DNA from: Lepidodermella squamata
Lineage: Eukaryota > Animalia > Gastrotricha
DNA: 64,000 nucleotides
Assembly (NCBI GenBank): GCA_047495785.1
Contig: JBLDXI010000008.1
Span: 13,987-77,986, forward strand
Direction: 5' to 3'
Shown: positions 1 through 33,667 of the stretch, in pieces
Layout: every line of letters starts with the position of its first letter
How positions within the stretch are numbered: the first letter of the stretch is position 1
Notes under the pieces: generated by a model
Told to the model about the DNA's origin: nothing
Seen by the model: only the letters and a program-made list of their open reading frames with translations
The model's database searches: none
Position numbers and translations under genes: made by a program

Positions 1-805
1 TCATCTCTTGTCTTGGTAGCCGTCCCATCCCGGGTCCAAAGCGTGGTGTTCTCAGCTGCTGCTCACTTCTGTCTCGAGGACTTGGACATTCTCGTTGGAG
101 GTGCCCGTAGCCATGACAGTTTGAACACTGACCCTTCTCGACTCGCTGTGTTGGTTTGAATACTTCTTTCTCCTTCTCTTCTTTTGCCGCCTCGTAGTTT
201 GAATTTGGTTTGTTCTTTATCTCAAACTTGTCGATTGGCGACAGATATCTGCCAATTTCAACCTTCCCTTGATAGATGGATGCACCTTGAATTTCGAGAC
301 CTCGAATTCCTTCTCCCTCCATCTTGTTTTTCTCCTCGGTCACTGCTACCGTGACCTCTCCCATATGTGAAGTGAGCGGTTTCTCGGCCCTTAGAGGAGC
401 CATCCAGCTCGTTCTCGCCAGTTCCAAGGCTGTTTTGACATTTCTTTTTCCATCTTCTAAGAAGCGGATTCTTTTGGCGTTGACATTGATGGTTTTTTCG
501 ACTTTCCAGGTCACTTTCGGCAGGATTTGCTTCAGTGTTGCTTCTTGATCTGCGAAAGTTGATAGACCGGACGCGTCGATACAGTCTTCCAATAGAAACT
601 TGTCTATAATGTGCTTCCTCCTTTCTTCTTCTTTCTTCTCCGCTTTATCTGCCATCTCTTCGACCAGACACATCATCAGTTCTTCAAGGATCGAATGGAC
701 ATTTCCAAGCGATATGCCATTCCTCTCCAGAAACCGGTTTATCTCCGCGTCGTTCATCTTCTTCATCTCCTCCATGAGAGCCTTTAGATGTTGCAGCGTC
801 TTCAT
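1..805 (-). mobile_element. Retrotransposon gag/ORF1-like ORF with CCHC zinc knuckle; runs off the left window edge
   Basis: Minus-strand frame from ATG 805 (MKTLQHLKALMEEMKK...). The 3' portion that I translated is open to base 1 and contains CSNCHGYGHLQREC (CX2CX4HX4C) at 86-127. It is absent from the ORF track, consistent with no stop inside the window. Confidence 0.75.
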
Positions 806-3147
806 GTCAATATTTTTTATAACAAAACCTCAGAAAACCTTAGAATTCGAAAATCGATACGCAGATATTAAATAAATAAATACTAAAAATGTTTACAATT
901 TTTTTTGCCACTTTTCTGTCTGCACTTATTACAACGATCTCAATTTCGACGACCTCCACCCTGCGGTTGGCGGAGTTCGTGACGGGGGAACCTAACGCGG
1001 TCAGTGGTTGTGTGGGTTGATGTTATCGGGAGGGTGACTATCTATGGAATCGATCAATTCGATCTATGCATCCAGGATCCAGGGTCTGCGAGAGAGCAGT
1101 TGAGAGAGTAGTTATAGATAATAAGGGCAAAGAAAACAAGAGAAGTTGGGGTCATTTGTGGTTCGTCCAGTGCTCGGTGAACACTGTTGAGTACACTGTT
1201 AGAGTCGAGTCGAGTTGAGCTCCTCACTTGAACCTGACTGCAAACTTGCCTGGTCTCTACCCAGTAACTCTAACTTGAATTCAATTGGAAGACTCAATTG
1301 GAAGGTTAGTGCAAGTAGCGGCGGTATGAGTCGTGAATCGCAAGGGCAATAGGCCGTCAAAACAGCGATCTGCAATATGCCAGAATAAGAGCGCAGTTGC
1401 ATTGAATCATAATATAATTGGTCGAAACAGCGCCATCGATGCCCATTTTAGTTGTTTCAACTATGCACATGCGAGCACAACGAGCAACAACCCTCCATCG
1501 CCTCCCCTGTTAGAAACAGGAGATACATAGCAATAAATATTCTTTCCGATCAAGCCATTTTAAATCAACAGCTGAGATGATAGCACTACTCTTATTGCCT
1601 CGTTAAACGTCAAACAAGGGCATGAGACCTCGAAACTCTCCATGTTCTGATCAAGCTTCAATCTCAAATCTCAGAGTGGCTTACGAAGCAACTCCGCGGA
1701 ATTCCTCTGCGACAGTCCATCAAGAATGACAGATTCCCCAAAGGATAGCAGAACTTTTTGGCTCACTAACCGAGGTGCTGTTGTTGTGACATTACCTCAC
1801 TCATCATTTGGTACTTGTTTGTCAATGTAAAGGCGCGCTGCTTTCCTCTCTTATAAAGAGACGAAGCGATTCTCTCGCGAATAAGGATTAAGAATAAAGA
1901 TTGGAATAGCTGGAATAGCTTGGTTAGGAATAGCTGTGTAATTTTTCATTCGGTACTTATCGTCTGATTTTAATTTAGCATTAGTGTTTAGCATTAATGC
2001 AATCTTGAAGCTTGTAATAACTTGATTTTACATGAAATGAAGGGAACGAAGCGGCATTAGAAGCTCAAATGTGCTGGGTTTGAAAAGTTAATACCACTTG
2101 AAATTAATTTCCATACATAAATTGCCAAATGAATTGCATGCTACTGATGCACGCTGACACAACCGGGCGATGCGGGAGCGGATGATCCGCGAGTTGGATG
2201 GCACTGCAGATGCCGCTTCATCTTGCGTCGACTAAAGTCAGCCAAGAATGGCACAGCCTGGCCTAAGGTAATATAACCGTAGTTTTAGTGAACACCATCA
2301 CTAACGCTCCAATCAAGGAGTTTTACAGCCAACTTTACAGCTAACAAGCCTTTTGGCCTCAGCGATTTGTTTCTTAGATGAAAGCTTGTTGTCAATCGTT
2401 AAGCCCAGAGTGACTAAAGCATTTTTATTTGTAGGAGTATTGGCGACTGGCGATACCGTGGACCGTGCAGTGCAGATACCGTGGGAAATGGAGAATGAGA
2501 AACTTTGAGAAAGTCATTTTCGACTTATAACATGCATAACGTCATTGATTTAAGAATCTTTTATTCTTTCAATTTGCGTTGCAACAATTTATAATTGATA
2601 TCACAGTGTCCCGGCATTCGGGCACCCATGATGCCGGACCCTTTTCCCCTTGAGCCTACAATTCAAGACCAGCGTTGGATTTCGCTAGCTGGTAGACGAA
2701 ACGTTCACGCTGGCCTGGTAGATCTGCGCGGTTTAGCCCCTGACCTGCTCATCGCTCATCTCACAGAGAGAGAAGCCGCAAGGGAATTATGTCAGAGACC
2801 ACAGCTGAAAAACTCAACAAAAACTAAACTAAACTTTATTGGCGTGCAAGCATCATCTACATGATTGTAACCCTGGGACAAGAATGTAGCACATGGTAAG
2901 GCATATTTATCAAAAGCACTCAAGTGTTTATCTAGTGGCTATTGCTGGCGAAAGGCTGAGAATGTCGGATCACAGAGCCGTATATAGGGTGTTAACCAGA
3001 GGATGTCGCAGATCTACGGGTATTGCTGTCCGTGTTGGCGTCAATCTTTTGCACCATAGAGCTTTTGCACCGTGCGACACCGCAAGCTCCATTGCCAGCA
3101 AACCGACTTTGACGAGTGTCGTGCGGTTTCGCTTGGTTACTGCTGAC

Positions 3148-3874
3148 CAGGGCCGGATTAACGCATATGCACAGAGAGCACGTGCCCAGGGGCCGCCAGT
3201 CAAAAAGGGCCGCCAGAAAGTGGTGAAATGTTCACTTTTACTAAACATTCCCGGAAGATTTTTGGGCCTTTATTAGGTCGTTATGCTTTGCAATTGAGAG
3301 CCTTTCCAAGCATCCGGATCAGACTATTTTTTTAATTTTGCTTGAATTTTGATCGCTTCGCTCGCTAGTTCATCAACTATTGTACAATTTATTTCATCAT
3401 TTCTACCCCTATTCAATTCATTTTGAACAAGCGTAAAACTCAATGAAGCCTGAACCTTGCCTCAATGTTTTCCGAGTTTACCGAGTTTATTAGAATGAAA
3501 CAGGAAAAGCAAGGATTTTTCTGCATGAGAAAAACGATTTTCAGGAATATTCTTGGAAAATTTCTCGCTTCGCTCCTGGTAAGGTGACAACATTCCAAAG
3601 TTGCGGTTATTTTGTTGGAAAATCGAAAGCACTTATTAACATCAACTCCAGCTATGTGAGCAATGTTAGGTGGCTTGCAGCAACAGAATACCAAAGCAAA
3701 ATTAAATTACAAAAGGAATTTTTGCTTTTGAATCTCTATTCCATCAGGAAATTGAGAAAATTGACGTTAGTCACGGTTGCAGGTATGAAAACCTAGTTTT
3801 AGCGGAAAAATATGAAGAGTAGGGCCGCCAACCAGGAAGTGCCCAGGGGCCACCCGAATGTTAATCCGGCCCTG
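3148..3874. mobile_element. Non-autonomous hAT-type MITE (727 bp)
   Basis: Perfect 15-bp TIR CAGGGCCGGATTAAC / GTTAATCCGGCCCTG; perfect 8-bp TSD CTGCTGAC at 3140-3147 and 3875-3882. Confidence 0.93.
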
Positions 3875-4008
3875 CTGCTGACCGAGATGATTGGGTGATC
3901 TTGACAAGGATCGACGACCGAGTGTATTGCTGTCACCCAGCCGGAGCAGTAGGGGTTAAGTGCTCTGCTTAGTTACACACGCGCCAAGACTTGAAGGCGA
4001 ACCACTGT

Positions 4009-4480
4009 ATCAATCAATCAATCAATCAATCATTTTATTATTTCTTATTCGAAAATGAAAATAATGCACCAATGTTATAATAAGTTTTATACAGTAAACA
4101 AATTCGAACACGAGGACGCTAGGCACCCAAGATCAAGATTTACACCTTCTTAACACCTAATGATATGAATGGCACAACTTCATATTCTATTAATAATCAT
4201 AACAACATTCATGTTTTCTTTTTTCAAATACTTCAGCTAATATTTTAACAACAACTTCAGTTTTTCTTTAAAGAATATACAGGAGGACTCTAGGGATAGA
4301 TCACCGGGAAGATTGTTCCACCAGGCAATAACTTGGAACGCAAAGGATCCGCGGAATGCAGCCAAGTAGCAGATAACAGTAGCAGATTTACTCCATGATG
4401 ACTTGATTATCCTCAGCCGCGTCTGAACACGTAATGTAAAGCGCAGTACATATGGAGGTCTGAAGGTACAATCAGATCAG
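4009..4480 (-). mobile_element. 5'-truncated CR1/L2-group LINE 3' end with (GATT)n tail
   Basis: Minus strand encodes SFAFQVIAWWNNLPGDL...FKEKLK, which resembles the CR1/L2 ORF2 C-terminal 'F..R...WNSLP' motif. It is followed by AATAAA and a (TGAT)n tail (plus-strand (ATCA)n ~4009-4032). The element's 5' boundary is approximate. Confidence 0.75.
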
Positions 4481-26808: not shown

Positions 26809-29800
26809 TTAGACGTAAGTCTCGCAGACAACAGCGCTTGGAGCATCTTGAGCCGTAGTGATGCAATCAATGTCGTTGAGGTAGAAATCGGCTGGGTTCG
26901 GGCCGAATTTAGAGTACATACTGTACGCAGCACAAGCTAGCGGGCCGCTTGGTTCGTCCTGCTGGACTCCGTTAACTACAGCGCCACCCCACTGGCGGTT
27001 GAAGGCGGTGAATGATGAGCCGTCAATCCATTGGTATTGGCTGGTTGCGTACTTGAGTCCAACCCAGGCGGAGGTCGTAACATCGGCATCGTGCAGGGCG
27101 AAGCGGACATCGTCTTGTTCAGCAACGGTTTTGACGGTCGCAAGCTGGCCAATGCGGCCTTGGCCATCACCCTGCTTACAAAGACGATCGGCATCAAAAT
27201 ACCTGCAAATTTTTGCAAAATTCATCAAATTGCAATGGTTGCTATGGAAATGTATTTATCCAGGCATCTGATAATCCCCTTCTAAAGTCCAAGGCGTTTC
27301 CCTAGCGACCGTTGCTATGGAACCTTTCACGCTGATGCTAATGGCACTAAACTAGAGCTAACTAGTATGTACGCCACCCCTTAGCAACAGTTGCTATGGA
27401 TGCTAAAATGATGCTCTGCCCTAGCAACCGATGCTGTAACATTATGGATGGCGATGAAACAAAAAAGTACTTCATGATCTTGTCGCCTAGAGGCCGCTCA
27501 ATCACGAAAAAGGTCTTCTTCGCAGTTTCGCACGATTGCTTGGATTTGTATGCAACGTCCAATGGCATTTGTACCAGGCTTTGGCAACCAACCAAGCTCG
27601 GACGGCAACTAGCAGCGCCAGCATTGTTGGTATCAATACACCGAACGTAGCCACGCTTAAAACAAACCATGATTCAAAGTCAGGTGAAAGGTTATTGACA
27701 TAGCTAACCGGTTTGAAGCTGTAAGTCTCGCATATAGCCGCATTGCCATCGGAGCTATCATCTGCATAATAATCGGCAATCTGTTGGCCGAAACTATGGT
27801 ATGGACCGAACGCAATGTATGGCTCGTTGGCGTCAGGTTGCTGATCGCCCCAGAATCCTTCCATCGCTTGTAGCCTACTACCATCAGGCCACGAGTAATT
27901 CCCATCTGCCAAACGAGAACCTCCGGTCCAACCGTAAAAGTTCTCAGCACCAGATGCCGACAACATTCGGCGGAGTCTAATTAGGTCCAGTTGGTCCTTA
28001 ATCGTCGCTAATTGGGCACCGGCTTCCAAGCAGGTTGAGACAGCCAAATCGCGGGTAGGCACTAGGGCAAGAATCAACCTGAATTCTTTTCCAGCGGCCA
28101 AGCATTGCGCCTCGGTTAGGAAAAGCTGGTCCTGAGGATTTTGCGTCGAGCCAGCGCAGCCGGTTGAGGCGGCAACACAACTTATAACGCCTTGGTTGTC
28201 ACATCGCACAAAGCCGAGTGTTGCTGGGCTAGGTTCCAAGAAGGTTTCGCAGACAGCTGCTGTAACTTGCGCATCGCACGAGTCGTCGTTCAAGTAGTAA
28301 TCTGATGTGTAGTTTTTGAACCCATTCTGTTGTTCGTAAACGACGCAGGGCGAGTTATCTAGCAAAACAAATAAACTTACATTTTGGGAATTGGAAATTT
28401 CGACCATGACAAATTTTGGCTCCATCGGGATCAAGTCAGACCACTGATGATGAGCATACCTGAAGGTTCGTCTGAAGTCTCTGTTCCACCCCACTGGCGA
28501 ACGTTGTTGTCGAGCGAAGAATATGGGGTGCCATCGATCCAGCTGTAGCCAGTCGCGACATTGACGCCCAGGCTGTTATCAGGCCCCAGGAGGCCAATCC
28601 ACGCACGTTGTACGTTGTTGGTGCGTAATAGATCCCTCACAAATGTCTGCTCGGCGGCCGTTTTCACAGTGGCTAGCTGGCCTTTCACAGAAGCGCACAT
28701 CCCTTCGGCGTCGACAGCTCCTTCGAGGGTTGCCTTTTGCACAAGGAACAGCTGCTTTTCCGCACCCATGCACGACTCGCCAGTTATGAAGGTTCGACCG
28801 GCTGGAACTTGCTTCTCATTCTCGGGCTTGCAGCCTGGCGAGTCAAACGTAAAGTTATGGCATGTATCTTTCGAATTTTCCTACCGTCACTGGCTCGCTT
28901 GCACGAAAACGACCCTCCAGCTTGGCATCTCACGTAGCCAGACTTCGAAAATTCGAATTTCAGTGCAAACTTAACAAAATGTTCACAAAACTTACGTAAG
29001 TCATGCAATCTTCGTAGTTTTTCGCGAAATACGGAGATTGGTCGAATATTTTCGTAAAATCCTGAAATTGGTACATTCAAATTTCCTGGTAAGATTTTGG
29101 ACGTAATAACCGTTTGAGCGGGTTCGCAAGCCTCATCCTGAGGAATGCACGTGTAGACCGACGGCGTCATTGAGTGGCACGCTTTCACACCCTGTTTCGA
29201 TCACAACTTGTTACCATTACTAACACACACCCAAAGGAAACTCACAGACAAAAGGCATTTTGCATACGAGGTGAACGTTTGAGCGCTCGGACTCTGCGAT
29301 AAAGGTATTCAAGAAATCATCCGATTCACGGGAAAATATGTTACCGTGTTTGCTGGGCATCCATCAGAGGCCAACTGGCACGAGTGGAACATGTTATAAG
29401 CATCAAAGCATCTTTTGAAGGAATCCTAAGAATAAGGCATATCAAAATCAAACGGAAACATTTCAGGATAGCCAACCTGTTTACAGTATTTTCGAGCCGT
29501 TGCGTAGTTGCTGCCGAAAGATCTGCTCGAGGAGAATGTACCCAGCTGTTGAGCTTAGTAGTTAGACCTGAGCTATAATTTAGGCTGAATCGAACTTACC
29601 TCGACTTGGGAAGGTAGGCATTCGAACTCGGCTCCACTGACTTGATAGAGATCACCTACATCTTGGTAGCAGCATTTGGCACCCGCATTTTCGCAGACAG
29701 AATGGTCGTTCAAAAATGGAGGGATCGTCGCGTCGAAAGCTTCAAGCTGTAGATGAAAAGAAATTAGTTCAGGATTCTATTATGGCAGGAATAGTCGAAA

Positions 29801-32800
29801 CTTACCCGAACAAGGCCGTTGCTGCATTGATCGGCTGCAGCTTCGCACTTTTTGAAAGTCACCGTATTCGGATCAATGCATCGCATGTATTGCTCTGAAA
29901 AATTCAAAAATTGATGGTTACTTCGAATCCACACGGAGCTTGTTCATGATCCGAGAATTTAGGGTTTTTTGGTCGTTGAAGAATTTTGGTTTGACCCTAG
30001 GAAATGGGCTCTTCAGGTTGAGAAATTTTTCCAGGAATCAGAAGATTCGAAAAGCAACAATTGAAAAATTCGAAAATAAGCGAGGAACAAGACAATACTT
30101 ACGGCATCTGCGAATATAGCGGCAATCTTCAATCTTGTGATAGTCCCGATCGATGAAGCAGTAGGTGCTATTGCGCGATCCAGGGTTACGGCACGCCCTG
30201 CCCGACGCTAGAATGTCGGCTTTGGGGAAACGAATCGGGCTGAACGAAGTCTGCTTCGACCAAGTTCGGCACTCTTTGCCGGACGCCGTATTGCGAACCG
30301 AGCCTTCATAGTCGTACCCGGTCTCCGTCATTTGGCATTCTTTCGTTTGCGTCAGAGCCGTCACGGATCCGCAGGGTGACATAACCACAAGCTTGAAGCC
30401 AGTCGAGTCGTTACGACCGGAAGGTGAGTGGAAAATGACGAGAGCTTCCTTCGATAGCGTTTTGTAGATTCGCCCCGAAGTCAAGCTGCACCTGCAGAAC
30501 CTAAACGGAAATCCAATAGTAAAAATCAAAAGTGGAGTGAAATTGGGGTGAGGGCGAACTTCGGTCCTGGCCTAGTGTAGTCTTCTGAGCGAATTTCGAC
30601 GTAGTCGTCGCAGACAGCCTCCCATTGCTGGCAAGTCAAGCCTGGGCGGCGTTCGAAGGCAAATATCAAGCCATTTCCATCCTGGAAAATGAAATTTCAA
30701 ATTTGAACATTATAATTTATGATGAATCATCGAAAAGGGCAATTCTGATTCAGAAAATTGTGCTTTCAAATTCAAATAAATTGATTTTTAATCAGGAAAA
30801 TGGTTACATCCAGATTAAATGAAATAAATTAGTTAGATATTTGATTAATTAATTAATTTCAAAAAATGTATAATTTAAGATTATTCATAATAGCATAATT
30901 TTCATTAGAATTTGAAAATTGAAATTTTTGAAATTTGACAAAAAATATTTTTCTTAGATCAACTTACAGTTTGAACTCTCCAAAAGCACTCGGTGTTAGC
31001 AGGATACTTGTCCGGGTAATTAGGCGAAGTGATGGCCTCGCCAGTGCTGCACTTCTGGATAACCTTAGTACCGCCACATCCGTTGATGACCGGCGCGATT
31101 TCATCGCAAAATTGGCCGCCAATGCCTCGCGGGCACACGCACCAGCCGCAGTTGAACGGATTTTCATAGCCACCGTTCTTGCAAACAGGACGCGTCGTAC
31201 TGCTGTTGCAGACTTTGGCTGCGAAAGAGAATAAAATAATAAACCAATAAACCGAGTCGAAAATTGTGAAGAAAATAAAAAACAAATTAAGCTTTTAAAT
31301 TTAAATTTTAAATTTTGAATATATTGAAAATTGGAAAAAATCAATTTGTAAATTCTGTTTTTTAGTCAGTATTATATTTCTGCATTTTTCCAATTTTATT
31401 GCGGCCGAAATAAAATAATTTCAAATTTAGAAAATCAACGCATTTTTTATTCTATTTCTGAATTTTTCTAAGAAATTCCAACCTGGACAATTGTAAAGCC
31501 AGTTGATGCGCTTAGCATCTAAGAAAGATAGGTAAAGCCGTTGGCCCATAGTGTACAAAAAGGCGGGATCTTTCGGTTCAATTGTTCGCCGTTTGCCGTC
31601 CGGGTTGAAGCTGAGCCACAGTGAATCGGGGTGCATGATAGACTCAAAGTCGTACGGCGTGTTGCCATCGCGAATGTGAGGGAAAATGCCGAAAAAACTC
31701 CGCTTGCCGCTGCAAAAAAATAGAAAATGTCACTAATTTAAAAATTGCTTTGAAATTGAAAAAAATAATAAAAAATCCGATTTTTTAACGGAGAATTTAC
31801 GATTTGCCTGAATAAAGAGAGGGGCCATTTGTAGAAAAATTAAATTGAAATCACTTGAAATTTCAAAAAAATTAAAATTTTAAATATTAACCTCATTATA
31901 TTTTTGTAAATGACTCGGACGTATTTGAATCGATCAGGGCGAGCAGTTTCATCAGCCTGAAAAAATACATGCCATCAATAATTTGGGACAAAAATAATTA
32001 GCAACAAACCAATCCTAGTGCGTGACCTATTTCACGCGCAACTTTTCCGACTCGCATGCAATCACCGCCAAGGACAATTTTCTGAACGCCAGACTTTGAC
32101 ATGCCAATTTCAGACTGGCACAGTTGGAAGCTTTATAGGCAAGAACAGATTGATCGTATCACCTAAGAAATGTTCATAGCTCACTTGGGCGATTTTGTAA
32201 ACAAAATGCTGTTGTTGAAATTGTTAAGCTCCTCAGGCGTATGTTCCTCGAACAACACGCAGGTCTTTTCCGTCCACCATGAAATTGCTTTTCGGATGAT
32301 ATCTCGGTCAGATTCCCCTGGAAAAGAAAAAAAATTAAATTATTTGAACAGATTTTTAGAATAAATTTCAAATTTTTTTATTCGAATTTTAAATTTCAAA
32401 ATTCTTTTGAAAAAGTTTGGAAATTAAAAAATTCGAATTGGAATGTAAATTTCACATTAGCTATTAAAATGCAATTTAAATAATTCTGAAAATTTTGTGA
32501 GAATTTCAAGAATTTTTAATTTTGTAACTTACACATATAGTCGATGAAAGCGTAAGGAACGAGGCGTGACGGCCACACTCGAACGCTTCGCGGGATGGCG
32601 TTAACGCGTGGCTGTTGCGAATATTGCTTGGGCGCAATTTGCATAAGCATCGACGCCAACGTATCGCGGTCTTGCTTCTTGTAAATTCTGTTCAGCAAAT
32701 TATCCGGGCACTCGTCGTGCGGAATGCGCATGCTGGCTCGAAATTTGTTCGACAGCCTATCCAAAATCTCCTCTTTCGTGAGCTGAAATTTAGGAAATAA

Positions 32801-33320
32801 TTAAAAAAATCTGTTATTCTTTACTGCTAACCAGGAAAAATCGAGAAAAATCCGGTTAAATGTTGAATAATTCATGTATTTTTTTAGAAAATCCAGAAAA
32901 TTCTGGAAAATTGGGTAAAATCCTTAGCTACATCGAAAATTAAAATGAGACTTCAGATATAATTTTTAATTTTTTTTAAATTATTTTTTGAATTTTTTAA
33001 ACTGCAAAAATGAATTCAGCAAAATAAATGTTATTGAAATAATTTTTTGAATGAGCCTAAATTAATTAGGGAGGACTACTGAAATCCTAATACAAAATAT
33101 TTGAATAGGCTAATTATCTCTGCACAAATTTTGATTGAAAATTTGTGGAAAAATTGAAAATTACCGATTCAGCATCCTTGATTTGCGGCTTAATTTCGAT
33201 TCCACCATCCTGATTTCCAGGCATTTCTGGCGGCTGGAACCCAGGCATGACCATTTCTTGCGCATCGCCCAACGCCACGGCTAAACAGCCGATTGCTAAA
33301 ACAGCGATTACCAACCTCAT
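26809..33320 (-). CDS. Multi-exon secreted astacin-like (pseudo)metalloprotease: signal-pro-astacin*-EGF-CUB-kringle-Cys-rich-3x(4-Cys module + C-type lectin)
   Basis: Signal MRLVIAVLAIGCLAVALG; RVNAIPRSVRVWPSRLVPY; AISWWTEKTCVLF; REIGHALGL^ADETARPDR; YDFESIMHP; MGQRLYLSFLDAKRINWLYNC; EGF CKNGGYENPFNCGWCVCPRGIGGQFC; CUB ITSPNYPDKYPANTECFW; kringle YEGSVRNTASGKECRTW...CRNPG; three CTLDs ending AVCETF / AICETY / VVCETYV*. The kringle exon splices onward in frame. Small exons at ~29.1-29.6 kb were not fully resolved. Confidence 0.85.
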
Positions 33321-33667
33321 GTATTTTTCGAACGAAAATTAAAATTAATAGTGAGAAATAAACATCACAAGGCACATTTCAAGGCACGCGATTGATTCTT
33401 TTATGAATGAAAAACAAAACAGGTGATGCACAAGTTTTACGTCAAAAACAACAAATTAAATATGAGAGGAAAATATTTGAAAAATTAATTCAAAATTAAA
33501 CGTTTGAAAAACAACGTCAAATGTAACTTTAAATAGAAACATTACTGCGAAGAAATTTCCCGGAAGGAAATCACGAACGAACATAGATAAAAGCCGGAAG
33601 CTCGAGGGTATCGATGGAAAAGGTCGATAGAATTATTTTTTCGGACTTTATTTCAAATGTTTCGAAA

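What the first reader, a model, noticed from the sequence alone, without database searches (positions are those of the whole stretch)
31628..32036. Astacin domain has lost its zinc site: a pseudo-protease
Seen: the zinc motif reads R-E-I-G-H-A-L-G-L^A-D-E (CGT at 32034-32036; GAT at 31951-31953) and the Met-turn reads SIMHP (CCC at 31628-31630), while the reading frame, Cys residues and flanking motifs are intact. Known: astacins use HExxHxxGxxHE and SxMHY; Asp as third ligand occurs in a few metzincins, but Arg at His1 cannot bind Zn and the Tyr switch is gone. Inference: three separate active-site changes in an otherwise conserved ORF indicate a retained non-catalytic role (binding, decoy or protease regulator), not a sequencing error.
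Basis: partly seen in the sequence, partly recalled or inferred. Interest (0 to 1): 0.75.

Follow-up and report, generated by a model that had tools for sequence, protein, structure and literature searches.

The report
Zinc-less astacin kept by selection
A spliced gene of a small invertebrate encodes a large secreted protein whose astacin protease domain has lost a zinc-binding histidine (to arginine), yet it is very strongly conserved, so it most likely works by binding rather than cutting and sits midway in a gene family losing its catalytic site step by step.

Summary
On the minus strand, a nine-exon 5' part encodes signal peptide, propeptide, astacin, EGF-like, CUB and kringle. The zinc motif reads R-E-I-G-H-A-L-G-L|A-D-E (| = intron) and the Met-turn S-I-M-H-P. 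It is neither an error nor a pseudogene. A second collinear copy on contig C42 has the same three residues. Over exons 2-G the copies differ at 53 bases but one amino acid, with no indels (dN/dS about 0.01). Introns differ by about 10% with many indels.

Asp as third ligand and Pro in place of the Tyr ligand are shared with at least ten paralogous loci that keep H-E-x-x-H. A sister group has lost every ligand and the Met. The gene is thus an intermediate in a stepwise decay series.

The gene probably continues 3' through Cys-rich modules into three C-type lectin domains, and the product is probably secreted.

No close relative is in the public protein collections, and I found no paper describing inactive astacins. 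This scan has already reported 'dead astacin + kringle' genes on other DNA of this genome. Loss of zinc and catalysis is inferred, not measured.

The parts
33165..33320 (-). Exon 1: start codon and signal peptide (52 codons)
   Evidence: ATG at 33320 and a hydrophobic N-terminus, with a GTAATT donor. This is the only exon evolving nearly neutrally between the copies (dN/dS about 0.7).
32533..32782 (-). Exon 2: propeptide and mature N-terminus (...VWPSRLVPYAF...)
   Evidence: Acceptor TTTCAG, donor GTAAGT. Seven base differences from C42 and no amino-acid change. The propeptide holds one Cys in H-D-E-C-P-D-N. The aspartate switch could not be placed by alignment.
32185..32317 (-). Exon A: astacin N-terminal subdomain with the first disulfide Cys
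   Evidence: PF01400 17.8 bits. Three synonymous differences from C42.
32010..32130 (-). Exon B: active-site helix, R-E-I-G-H-A-L-G-L (His1 -> Arg at 32036-32034)
   Evidence: PF01400 32.9 bits. PDB register. Codon CGT in both copies versus CAT (CAC in L083) in paralogues.
31892..31956 (-). Exon C: third-ligand position Asp (31953-31951), family-specific Glu, RPDRF
   Evidence: The same intron position and x-D-E start are seen in the Asp/Pro-group paralogues.
31483..31709 (-). Exon D: Met-turn S-I-M-H-P (Pro at 31630-31628) and the C-terminal Cys of the domain
   Evidence: PF01400 47.6 bits. PDB register. Five synonymous differences from C42.
30968..31218 (-). Exon E: EGF-like module and start of CUB
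   Evidence: Pfam CUB 25.5 bits. 45% identical to the equivalent part of P0001.
30560..30681 (-). Exon F: middle of CUB
   Evidence: Ten synonymous and no nonsynonymous differences from C42.
30103..30500 (-). Exon G: end of CUB plus kringle
   Evidence: Pfam Kringle E = 1.5e-10. CUB end and kringle lie in one exon, so the kringle belongs to the astacin gene. A GTAAGT donor is present in both copies.
28885..29894 (-). About eight small exons of Cys-rich modules (boundaries provisional)
   Evidence: Exon G ends in phase 1 and exon H (29894-29806) restores the frame. The next exons are also in frame. No Pfam match. No RNA evidence.
26809..28834 (-). Three C-type lectin domains (about 28834-28442, 28358-27709, 27241-26815), each preceded by a G-[YF]-V-R-C four-Cys module; stop at 26811-26809
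   Evidence: Pfam Lectin_C at 32.1, 25.1 and 25.7 bits. Exon chaining. A 1-nt indel against C42 at 27690 lies in the would-be transmembrane read-through, which argues that stretch is intron.

Best explanation
This is an intact, spliced gene for a large secreted mosaic protein: signal peptide, propeptide, astacin-like domain, EGF-like, CUB, kringle, Cys-rich modules and three C-type lectin domains. Its astacin domain keeps the metzincin fold determinants: four disulfide Cys, Gly turn, Met of the Met-turn and family-specific Glu. It can very probably no longer hold the catalytic zinc. The first ligand His is Arg, which cannot coordinate zinc and carries a positive charge at the metal site. The third ligand is Asp, and the fifth-ligand Tyr is Pro. 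The domain has been converted from a cutting module into a binding or scaffolding module that works together with the other binding modules of the protein. It arose in steps inside a lineage-specific astacin clade. First His3->Asp and loss of the Tyr ligand (Pro in most members), still seen with intact H-E-x-x-H in sister paralogues. Then His1->Arg by a single CAT->CGT transition in this gene. A sister group has gone on to lose every ligand and the Met. Shown: the residues, the gene structure of the 5' half, the second copy, purifying selection and the position among paralogues. Inferred: loss of zinc and activity, the binding role, the 3' exon chain and secretion.
For: The residues and their register are established. 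A second collinear copy on C42 (over 25 kb, 90-96% identical) has identical R/D/P, with the Pro codon CCC vs CCA. Exons 2-G differ at 53 bases with 1 amino-acid change and 0 indels. Introns 2-8 show 117 mismatches in 1095 aligned bases plus 62 gap columns. Nei-Gojobori dN/dS is 0.010 (binomial P = 3e-31). Astacin exons A-D show 14 synonymous and 0 nonsynonymous changes (P = 6e-10), against 0.7 for the signal-peptide exon. The paralogue census and exon-D tree place the gene inside a Tyr-less clade (split support 90/93), sister (92/75) to the H-E-I-G-H-A-L-G-x-x-D-E / S-I-M-H-P group, next to a fully degenerate group. The paralogues use CAT or CAC at His1. The closest public relatives, P0001 and P0005, are canonical, and P0001 is followed by kringle ORFs on its scaffold, so the architecture predates the loss. 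Run X2 holds 39% of the sampled 31-mers of 30000-33400. A fully spliced transcript would give about 43%, by my arithmetic from the exon lengths. X2 is too small (118 million letters) to cover a 121 Mb genome, so this weakly suggests transcription.
Against: No zinc-binding or activity measurement exists, and no structural model of this domain was made because the joined spliced sequence was not folded. The catalytic Glu, the second His and the Asp remain, so a two-ligand or otherwise rescued metal site is not formally excluded. No orthologue from another species is available, so selection is measured only between two copies in one assembly. Those copies may be alleles, and they show a near-identical tract just downstream that may reflect gene conversion. 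The tree rests on 70 columns and includes the Met-turn columns themselves.
Confidence: 0.75

Rival explanations
1. It is still an active metalloprotease that uses an unconventional metal site: His2, Asp and another residue or water. This would be comparable to metzincins with Asp as third ligand and Pro after the Met.
For: The general-base Glu, His2, Asp, the Met and the whole scaffold are conserved. The sister paralogues with H-E-x-x-H-x-x-G-x-x-D-E / S-I-M-H-P look like a possibly working variant site and are under purifying selection on this exon (dN/dS about 0.2-0.4). From established knowledge, snapalysin uses Asp as third ligand, and MMPs and adamalysins have Pro at Met+2.
Against: Arg at the first ligand cannot coordinate zinc and places a positive charge where the metal sits. 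Only two protein ligands would remain. RxDRD is also altered to RPDRF. An independent public protein, P0078, combines Arg at His1 with further ligand losses, which suggests this change goes with decay.
Confidence: 0.08
2. The gene is functional, but the astacin-like domain itself is dispensable. It would be removed after secretion or act only as a folding or export aid, as some ADAM pseudoproteases discard their protease-like domain. The working parts would then be the CUB, kringle and lectin modules.
For: The pseudopeptidase review PMC11266112 describes ADAM family members that discard the pseudopeptidase domain. The downstream binding modules are equally conserved (dN/dS 0.008).
Against: The four catalytic-domain exons show 14 synonymous and no nonsynonymous changes between the copies. 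That is at least as constrained as the rest of the protein, and hard to reconcile with a disposable domain. No processing site between the astacin domain and the EGF-like module was identified.
Confidence: 0.1
3. It is a pseudogene or an assembly or sequencing artefact.
For: Three canonical active-site residues are changed, and no identical protein is in the public collections.
Against: Two diverged copies carry the same residues and intact GT..AG sites, with no indel in 1723 exon bases against 92 gap columns in the introns. dN/dS is 0.01.
Confidence: 0.02

Closest known systems
Astacin family (MEROPS M12A, Pfam PF01400), especially EGF-CUB astacins such as BMP1/tolloid-like proteins and nematode NAS proteins
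   Same: Homologous catalytic-type domain with signal peptide, propeptide, four conserved Cys, Gly turn, Met-turn Met and family-specific Glu. It is followed by EGF-like and CUB modules.
   Different: His1 is Arg, His3 is Asp, the Tyr ligand is Pro and RxDRD reads RPDRF. The tail carries a kringle, novel Cys-rich modules and three C-type lectin domains. The closest public relatives are only about 30-60% identical per aligned exon (31.7% over exons A-B, 59% over exon D, 45% over exon E against P0001).
Pseudo-metzincins of the ADAM family (ADAM11/22/23, C. elegans UNC-71), as reviewed in PMC11266112
   Same: Metzincin fold retained with the Met-turn Met, zinc ligands substituted, and an extracellular multidomain protein thought to act by binding.
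   Different: A different subfamily (M12A, not M12B). Here the catalytic Glu and one His remain, whereas most ADAM pseudoproteases also lose the Glu. No partner or function is known.
Fully degenerate 'dead astacin + kringle' paralogues of the same genome (earlier notes s1-404918, s1-410374, s1-410323, s1-404931)
   Same: Same Tyr-less clade on the exon-D tree, same intron after A-L-G-L, and Pro at Met+2.
   Different: Those read A-A-[TA]-I-G-R-A-L-G-L|N-Y-E with S-S-[ST]-H-P: no His, no Glu and no Met. This gene keeps Glu, His2, Asp and Met and is sister to the H-E-x-x-H...D-E group instead.
Snapalysin-type zinc site (HExxHxxGxxD) and the MMP/adamalysin Met-turn with Pro at Met+2 (from established knowledge of metzincins)
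   Same: Asp at the third-ligand position and Pro two residues after the Met, as in this gene and its sister paralogues.
   Different: Those enzymes keep the first His, and this gene does not. There is no evidence of relationship beyond the shared metzincin clan.

Membership tests
Astacin (M12A / PF01400) | Sequence homology across the catalytic-type domain | tested here: met
   PF01400 matches exons A, B and D at 17.8, 32.9 and 47.6 bits, covering profile positions 18-45, 56-92 and 129-189. PDB astacins are the best hits.
Astacin (M12A / PF01400) | Zinc motif H-E-x-x-H-x-x-G-x-x-H-E with three His ligands | tested here: not met
   It reads R-E-I-G-H-A-L-G-L-A-D-E. His1 is Arg and His3 is Asp. 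The Glu, His2, Gly and family-specific Glu are present.
Astacin (M12A / PF01400) | Met-turn S-x-M-H-Y with Tyr as fifth zinc ligand | tested here: not met
   It reads S-I-M-H-P. The Met is kept and the Tyr is replaced by Pro in both copies (CCC / CCA).
Astacin (M12A / PF01400) | x-x-R-x-D-R-D motif after the family-specific Glu | tested here: not met
   It reads T-A-R-P-D-R-F, so the last Asp is Phe. The motif is as defined in PMC9848320.
Astacin (M12A / PF01400) | Two conserved disulfides (four Cys) | tested here: met
   The Cys lie in exon A (T-C), exon B (two) and exon D (N-C). They align with those of tolloid-like 1 and the meprins.
Astacin (M12A / PF01400) | Signal peptide plus propeptide with a zinc-blocking aspartate | tested here: inconclusive
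   A signal peptide and a roughly 60-residue propeptide are present. Alignment to P0001 and P0005 could not place the switch Asp.
Astacin (M12A / PF01400) | Zinc-dependent endopeptidase activity | not testable with these tools
   This needs recombinant protein, metal analysis and activity assays.
Pseudoenzyme (inactive metzincin homologue) | Catalytic or metal-binding residues lost while the fold determinants remain | tested here: met
   as described in the rows above.
Pseudoenzyme (inactive metzincin homologue) | Maintained by purifying selection, so not a pseudogene | tested here: met
   dN/dS is 0.010 over exons 2-G. The catalytic-domain exons show 0 nonsynonymous against 14 synonymous changes. 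There are no indels and the splice sites are intact in two copies.
Pseudoenzyme (inactive metzincin homologue) | Expressed as RNA and protein | tested here: inconclusive
   Run X2 holds 39% of the sampled words, close to the roughly 43% expected for spliced exons.
Snapalysin-like His-His-Asp zinc site | H-E-x-x-H-x-x-G-x-x-D with both helix His present | tested here: not met
   The first His is Arg in this gene. The feature is met in paralogues L041, L047, L054, L075, L076, L082-L086.

The most novel reading that the evidence does not exclude
The Tyr-less clade of this genome preserves, as living genes, successive stages of turning a metzincin protease into a binding module. Stage one would be astacins working with a His-His-Asp zinc site and no Tyr switch, a catalytic-site variant not described for M12A. 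Stage two would be this gene, in which the Arg guanidinium occupies the former metal position and may turn the cleft into an anion- or carboxylate-binding pocket. Stage three would be the ligand-free, Met-free forms. If so, the same scaffold and the same kringle and lectin tail could be compared across defined steps of catalytic loss within one genome.
Probability: 0.2. Interest if true: 0.7.

Novelty: new variant of a known kind. Interest (0 to 1): 0.5.

Why it matters
Pseudoproteases are well studied for ADAMs, rhomboids and carboxypeptidases. For astacins I found no description in the papers I could search. The 2024 pseudopeptidase review lists only ADAMs under M12, and the 2023 astacin review deliberately kept only sequences with intact motifs. 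This gene shows that an astacin scaffold can lose a zinc ligand and still be held under very strong constraint (dN/dS about 0.01). With its paralogues it forms a graded series: canonical, then His-His-Asp without Tyr, then this Arg form, then fully ligand-free. That series makes the order of events in pseudoenzyme evolution testable within one genome. It also flags a possibly functional new astacin zinc-site variant in the sister genes. The practical consequence for annotation is that Pfam-based counts of 'astacin proteases' in this animal will overstate its proteolytic repertoire.

Tried and rejected
My local scripts for searches did align the whole region, those places included, against contig C42. 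I therefore quote intron divergence without intron 1.

2. I looked for orthologues or the protein itself in public collections. An exhaustive phmmer search of exon D against 1.84 billion representatives found nothing above 60% identity.

3. I tried to name the organism through the nematode SL1 RNA family (RF00198). There was no match, and the control genomes were silent too, so this is uninformative.

4. I tried to delimit the 3' exons from divergence between the copies. This failed because 29930-28500 is nearly identical in both copies, apparent introns included.

5. I considered a membrane-anchored model with a hydrophobic read-through at 27709-27505. I rejected it because a four-Cys module is encoded there in another frame and the copies differ by a 1-nt indel at 27690.

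6. The greedy exon chain beyond the stop at 26811-26809 was rejected as an artefact of a length-maximising score.

7. Placement of the propeptide aspartate switch by alignment was ambiguous.

8. Literature searches for pseudo-astacins and MEROPS M12A non-peptidase homologues found nothing specific. Mohrlen et al. 2003 is not held.

All searches were exon by exon, by reference.
Full report
WHAT IS THERE. The window is eukaryotic DNA with short AT-rich introns. The finding lies in a minus-strand spliced gene. I placed nine exons for its 5' part by eye, all with GT..AG borders: 33320-33165, 32782-32533, 32317-32185, 32130-32010, 31956-31892, 31709-31483, 31218-30968, 30681-30560 and 30500-30103. 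The layout is:
- Exon 1 encodes a signal peptide.
- Exon 2 encodes a propeptide and the mature N-terminus.
- The next four exons (A-D) encode the rest of the astacin domain.
- The last three encode an EGF-like module, a CUB domain and a kringle.
Scanned exon by exon, Pfam gives Astacin at 17.8, 32.9 and 47.6 bits, CUB at 25.5 bits and Kringle at E = 1.5e-10. The end of CUB and the kringle share one exon, so the kringle belongs to this gene.

THE OBSERVATION. The motif is interrupted by a 53-nt intron and reads R-E-I-G-H-A-L-G-L | A-D-E-T-A-R-P-D-R-F. The Met-turn reads S-I-M-H-P. Alignment to solved structures fixes the register. The Arg lies under the first His of HExxH in tolloid-like 1 (3edi) and meprin beta (7aq1). 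The Pro lies under the zinc-ligand Tyr of meprin alpha (7uab). The general-base Glu, the second His, the Gly, the family-specific Glu, the Met and the four disulfide Cys are retained.

NOT AN ERROR, NOT A PSEUDOGENE. The genome (121 Mb, 151 contigs) holds a second copy of the whole locus on contig C42. It is collinear with the window for more than 25 kb at 90-96% nucleotide identity. Whether the two are diverged haplotypes or homoeologues I cannot tell. Both copies have Arg (CGT), Asp (GAT) and Pro. The Pro codon differs synonymously, CCC against CCA. Over the nine exons the copies differ at 62 of 1723 bases, without a single indel, and every splice site is intact in both. Introns 2 to 8 differ at 117 of 1095 aligned bases and carry 62 gap columns.

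In exons 2 to G there are 53 base differences and one amino-acid change. Nei-Gojobori counts, made exon by exon on complete codons only, give:
- dN/dS = 0.010 for exons 2-G (binomial P = 3e-31).
- 14 synonymous and 0 nonsynonymous changes in the four catalytic-domain exons A-D (P = 6e-10).
- dN/dS = 0.7 in the signal-peptide exon.
The astacin-like domain itself is therefore under very strong purifying selection.

WHERE IT SITS IN THE FAMILY. PF01400 matches at least 154 exon-level places in this genome. I fetched about 80 loci and read their zinc motifs and Met-turns. Three tiers appear:
- (i) Canonical genes with H-E-x-x-H-x-x-G-x-x-H-E and S-[IV]-M-H-Y, for example a cluster on C7. The closest public proteins, P0001 and P0005, belong with these.
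- (ii) An Asp/Pro group, mostly a tandem cluster on C46 plus loci on C32 and C36. It reads H-E-I-G-H-A-L-G-[LF] | P-D-E-H-Q-R-x-D-R-D with S-[IVM]-M-H-P, with variants ending in A, L or K. Both helix His and the Glu are kept, the third ligand is Asp, and the Tyr is gone.
- (iii) A fully degenerate group on C2, C3, C9, C10 and C48. It reads A-A-[TA]-I-G-R-A-L-G-L | N-Y-E-H-V-R with S-S-[ST]-H-P or S-I-T-H-P. No His, no Glu and no Met remain.
A maximum-likelihood tree of the Met-turn exon (62 rows, 70 columns, so resolution is limited) puts all Tyr-less sequences on one side of a split supported at 90/93. Within it the window's gene, with its C42 copy, is sister to the Asp/Pro group (92/75), next to the degenerate group.

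At the first-His position the Asp/Pro paralogues use CAT (CAC in L083), where this gene has CGT. One A-to-G transition explains the change. On the same exon, rough pairwise dN/dS values are 0.2-0.4 in the Asp/Pro group, 0.07-0.5 in the degenerate group and 0.08-0.15 in canonical genes (65 codons, so low power).

THE REST OF THE GENE. After the kringle exon there is a GTAAGT donor in both copies. The exon ends in phase 1, and the next exon (29894-29806) begins with the two bases that restore the frame. Further small exons follow in frame and encode Cys-rich modules with no Pfam match. Three C-type lectin domains follow (Pfam Lectin_C at 32.1, 25.1 and 25.7 bits). Each is preceded by a G-[YF]-V-R-C four-Cys module, and the third ends at a stop at 26811-26809. 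A hydrophobic read-through after the second lectin exon looks like a membrane anchor. It overlaps a four-Cys module in another frame and contains a 1-nt indel between the copies at 27690, so I read that stretch as intron and the protein as secreted. This 3' chain is inferred from frames and splice signals only. It agrees with an earlier first-reader note on this window (s1-407868).

RELATIVES ELSEWHERE. An exhaustive profile-free search of exon D against 1.84 billion representative proteins found 154 hits, none above 60% identity. The best hit, P0001, is a canonical astacin-EGF-CUB protein on a metagenome scaffold and is followed by kringle-bearing ORFs. The astacin-kringle architecture therefore predates the loss of ligands. 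Among the 150 best public hits nearly all are canonical. A few are degenerate: P0078 reads R-E-T-L-R-L-L-G-L-V-Y-E with S-V-M-H-P, P0116 and P0130 are also degenerate, and P0070 is canonical but has S-I-M-H-P. None of the motifs read in these hits has Asp as the third ligand.

LITERATURE. The 2024 review of pseudo-metallopeptidases lists only ADAMs under M12 (PMC11266112). The 2023 astacin review kept only sequences with intact motifs, and it lists kringle and C-type lectin among the domains found with astacins (PMC9848320). The C. elegans family paper does not discuss inactive members (PMC2824743). From my own memory, MEROPS files 'non-peptidase homologues' under M12A. I could not confirm this in the held papers.

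HOW IT MOST LIKELY WORKS. Shown: an intact gene in two copies under strong constraint, with a metzincin scaffold whose first zinc ligand is Arg. Inferred: with Arg at that position, Asp at the third position and no Tyr, the domain cannot hold the catalytic zinc. The cleft then serves for binding, in a protein otherwise made only of binding modules (EGF-like, CUB, kringle, lectins). I put this at 0.75. The rivals are:
- An unconventional active site (0.08).
- A dispensable domain that is removed after secretion (0.10). This fits poorly with zero nonsynonymous changes in the domain.
- A pseudogene or artefact (0.02).

WHAT THE SCAN KNEW ALREADY. Earlier reports on other DNA of the same genome describe 'dead astacin + kringle' genes (s1-404918, s1-410374, s1-410323, s1-404931) and a four-Cys module shared with lectins (s1-395101). 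Many attribute the genome to the gastrotrich Lepidodermella squamata. I confirmed for myself that a fully degenerate group exists and that this gene is related to it. I did not test the species assignment. What this report adds is that the present gene is a distinct, intermediate form, and that an H-E-x-x-H...D-E / S-I-M-H-P group exists beside it.

LIMITS. My local scripts for searches did align the whole region, those places included, against contig C42. The only hint of transcription is that a small 2015 run (X2, 118 million letters) holds 39% of the sampled words of 30000-33400. A fully spliced transcript would give about 43% by my arithmetic. The joined protein was neither searched nor folded, so there is no structural model of the altered site.

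Noticed in passing
G000:C46 about 815-884 kb (loci L041, L047, L075, L076, L079, L082, L083, L085, L086); also L084 (C32:2032740-2035698) and L054 (C36:982637-985622): These are astacin paralogues reading H-E-I-G-H-A-L-G-x-x-D-E with S-I-M-H-P. Both helix His and the catalytic Glu are kept, Asp is the third ligand and the Tyr ligand is absent. They may be active astacins with a His-His-Asp site, a variant not seen among the zinc motifs I could read in the 150 closest public proteins. Rough dN/dS on one exon is 0.2-0.4.
   Followed up: partly
window 20000-45000 vs G000:C42:1849404-1874590: The whole neighbourhood is duplicated collinearly at 90-96% identity (diverged haplotypes or homoeologues). 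Other contig pairs behave the same way (C17/C136, C10/C48, C42/C85, C42/C81), so much of the assembly may be present twice.
   Followed up: partly
window 28500-29930: This tract is almost identical between the C8 and C42 copies, apparent introns included (0-1 mismatch per 60 nt), while the flanks differ by 4-10%. It may be a recent gene-conversion tract.
   Followed up: no
window 32690-32720 (propeptide, exon 2): A single unpaired Cys sits in H-D-E-C-P-D-N of the propeptide. It recalls the MMP-like cysteine-switch motif that another note (s1-398139) reports for astacin propeptides of this genome. The usual aspartate switch could not be located.
   Followed up: no
L004/L029 (G000:C17:2006805-2011103) and L005/L006/L028 (C136): A single long open frame carries three astacin domains in tandem. 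One has a canonical H-E-L-L-H-T-V-G-L-F-H-E but a stop inside RxDRD. The other two have degenerate motifs (F-W-I-I-F-H-I-L-G-L-D-A-E and Y-L-A-F-L-V-T-G-I-P-D-E).
   Followed up: no
L043 (metagenome scaffold ERZ23486764 scaffold_20271), 120-4097: The closest public relative, P0001 (canonical astacin-EGF-CUB), is followed on its scaffold by ORFs with kringle domains. The astacin-kringle architecture therefore exists in an unsampled relative with an intact active site.
   Followed up: partly
Public proteins P0078, P0116, P0130, P0070: Scattered degenerate astacins exist in public collections. P0078 reads R-E-T-L-R-L-L-G-L-V-Y-E with S-V-M-H-P and has EGF and CUB, so it has an independent His1->Arg. 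P0116 reads N-L-I-G-H...N-T. P0130 has lost the catalytic Glu. P0070 is canonical but has S-I-M-H-P.
   Followed up: partly
window 28942-28885, 28250-28190 and 27655-27580 (approx.): A short G-[YF]-V-R-C...C...G-C four-Cys module precedes each of the three C-type lectin domains. It has no Pfam match, and it seems to be the module described in notes s1-407868 and s1-395101.
   Followed up: partly
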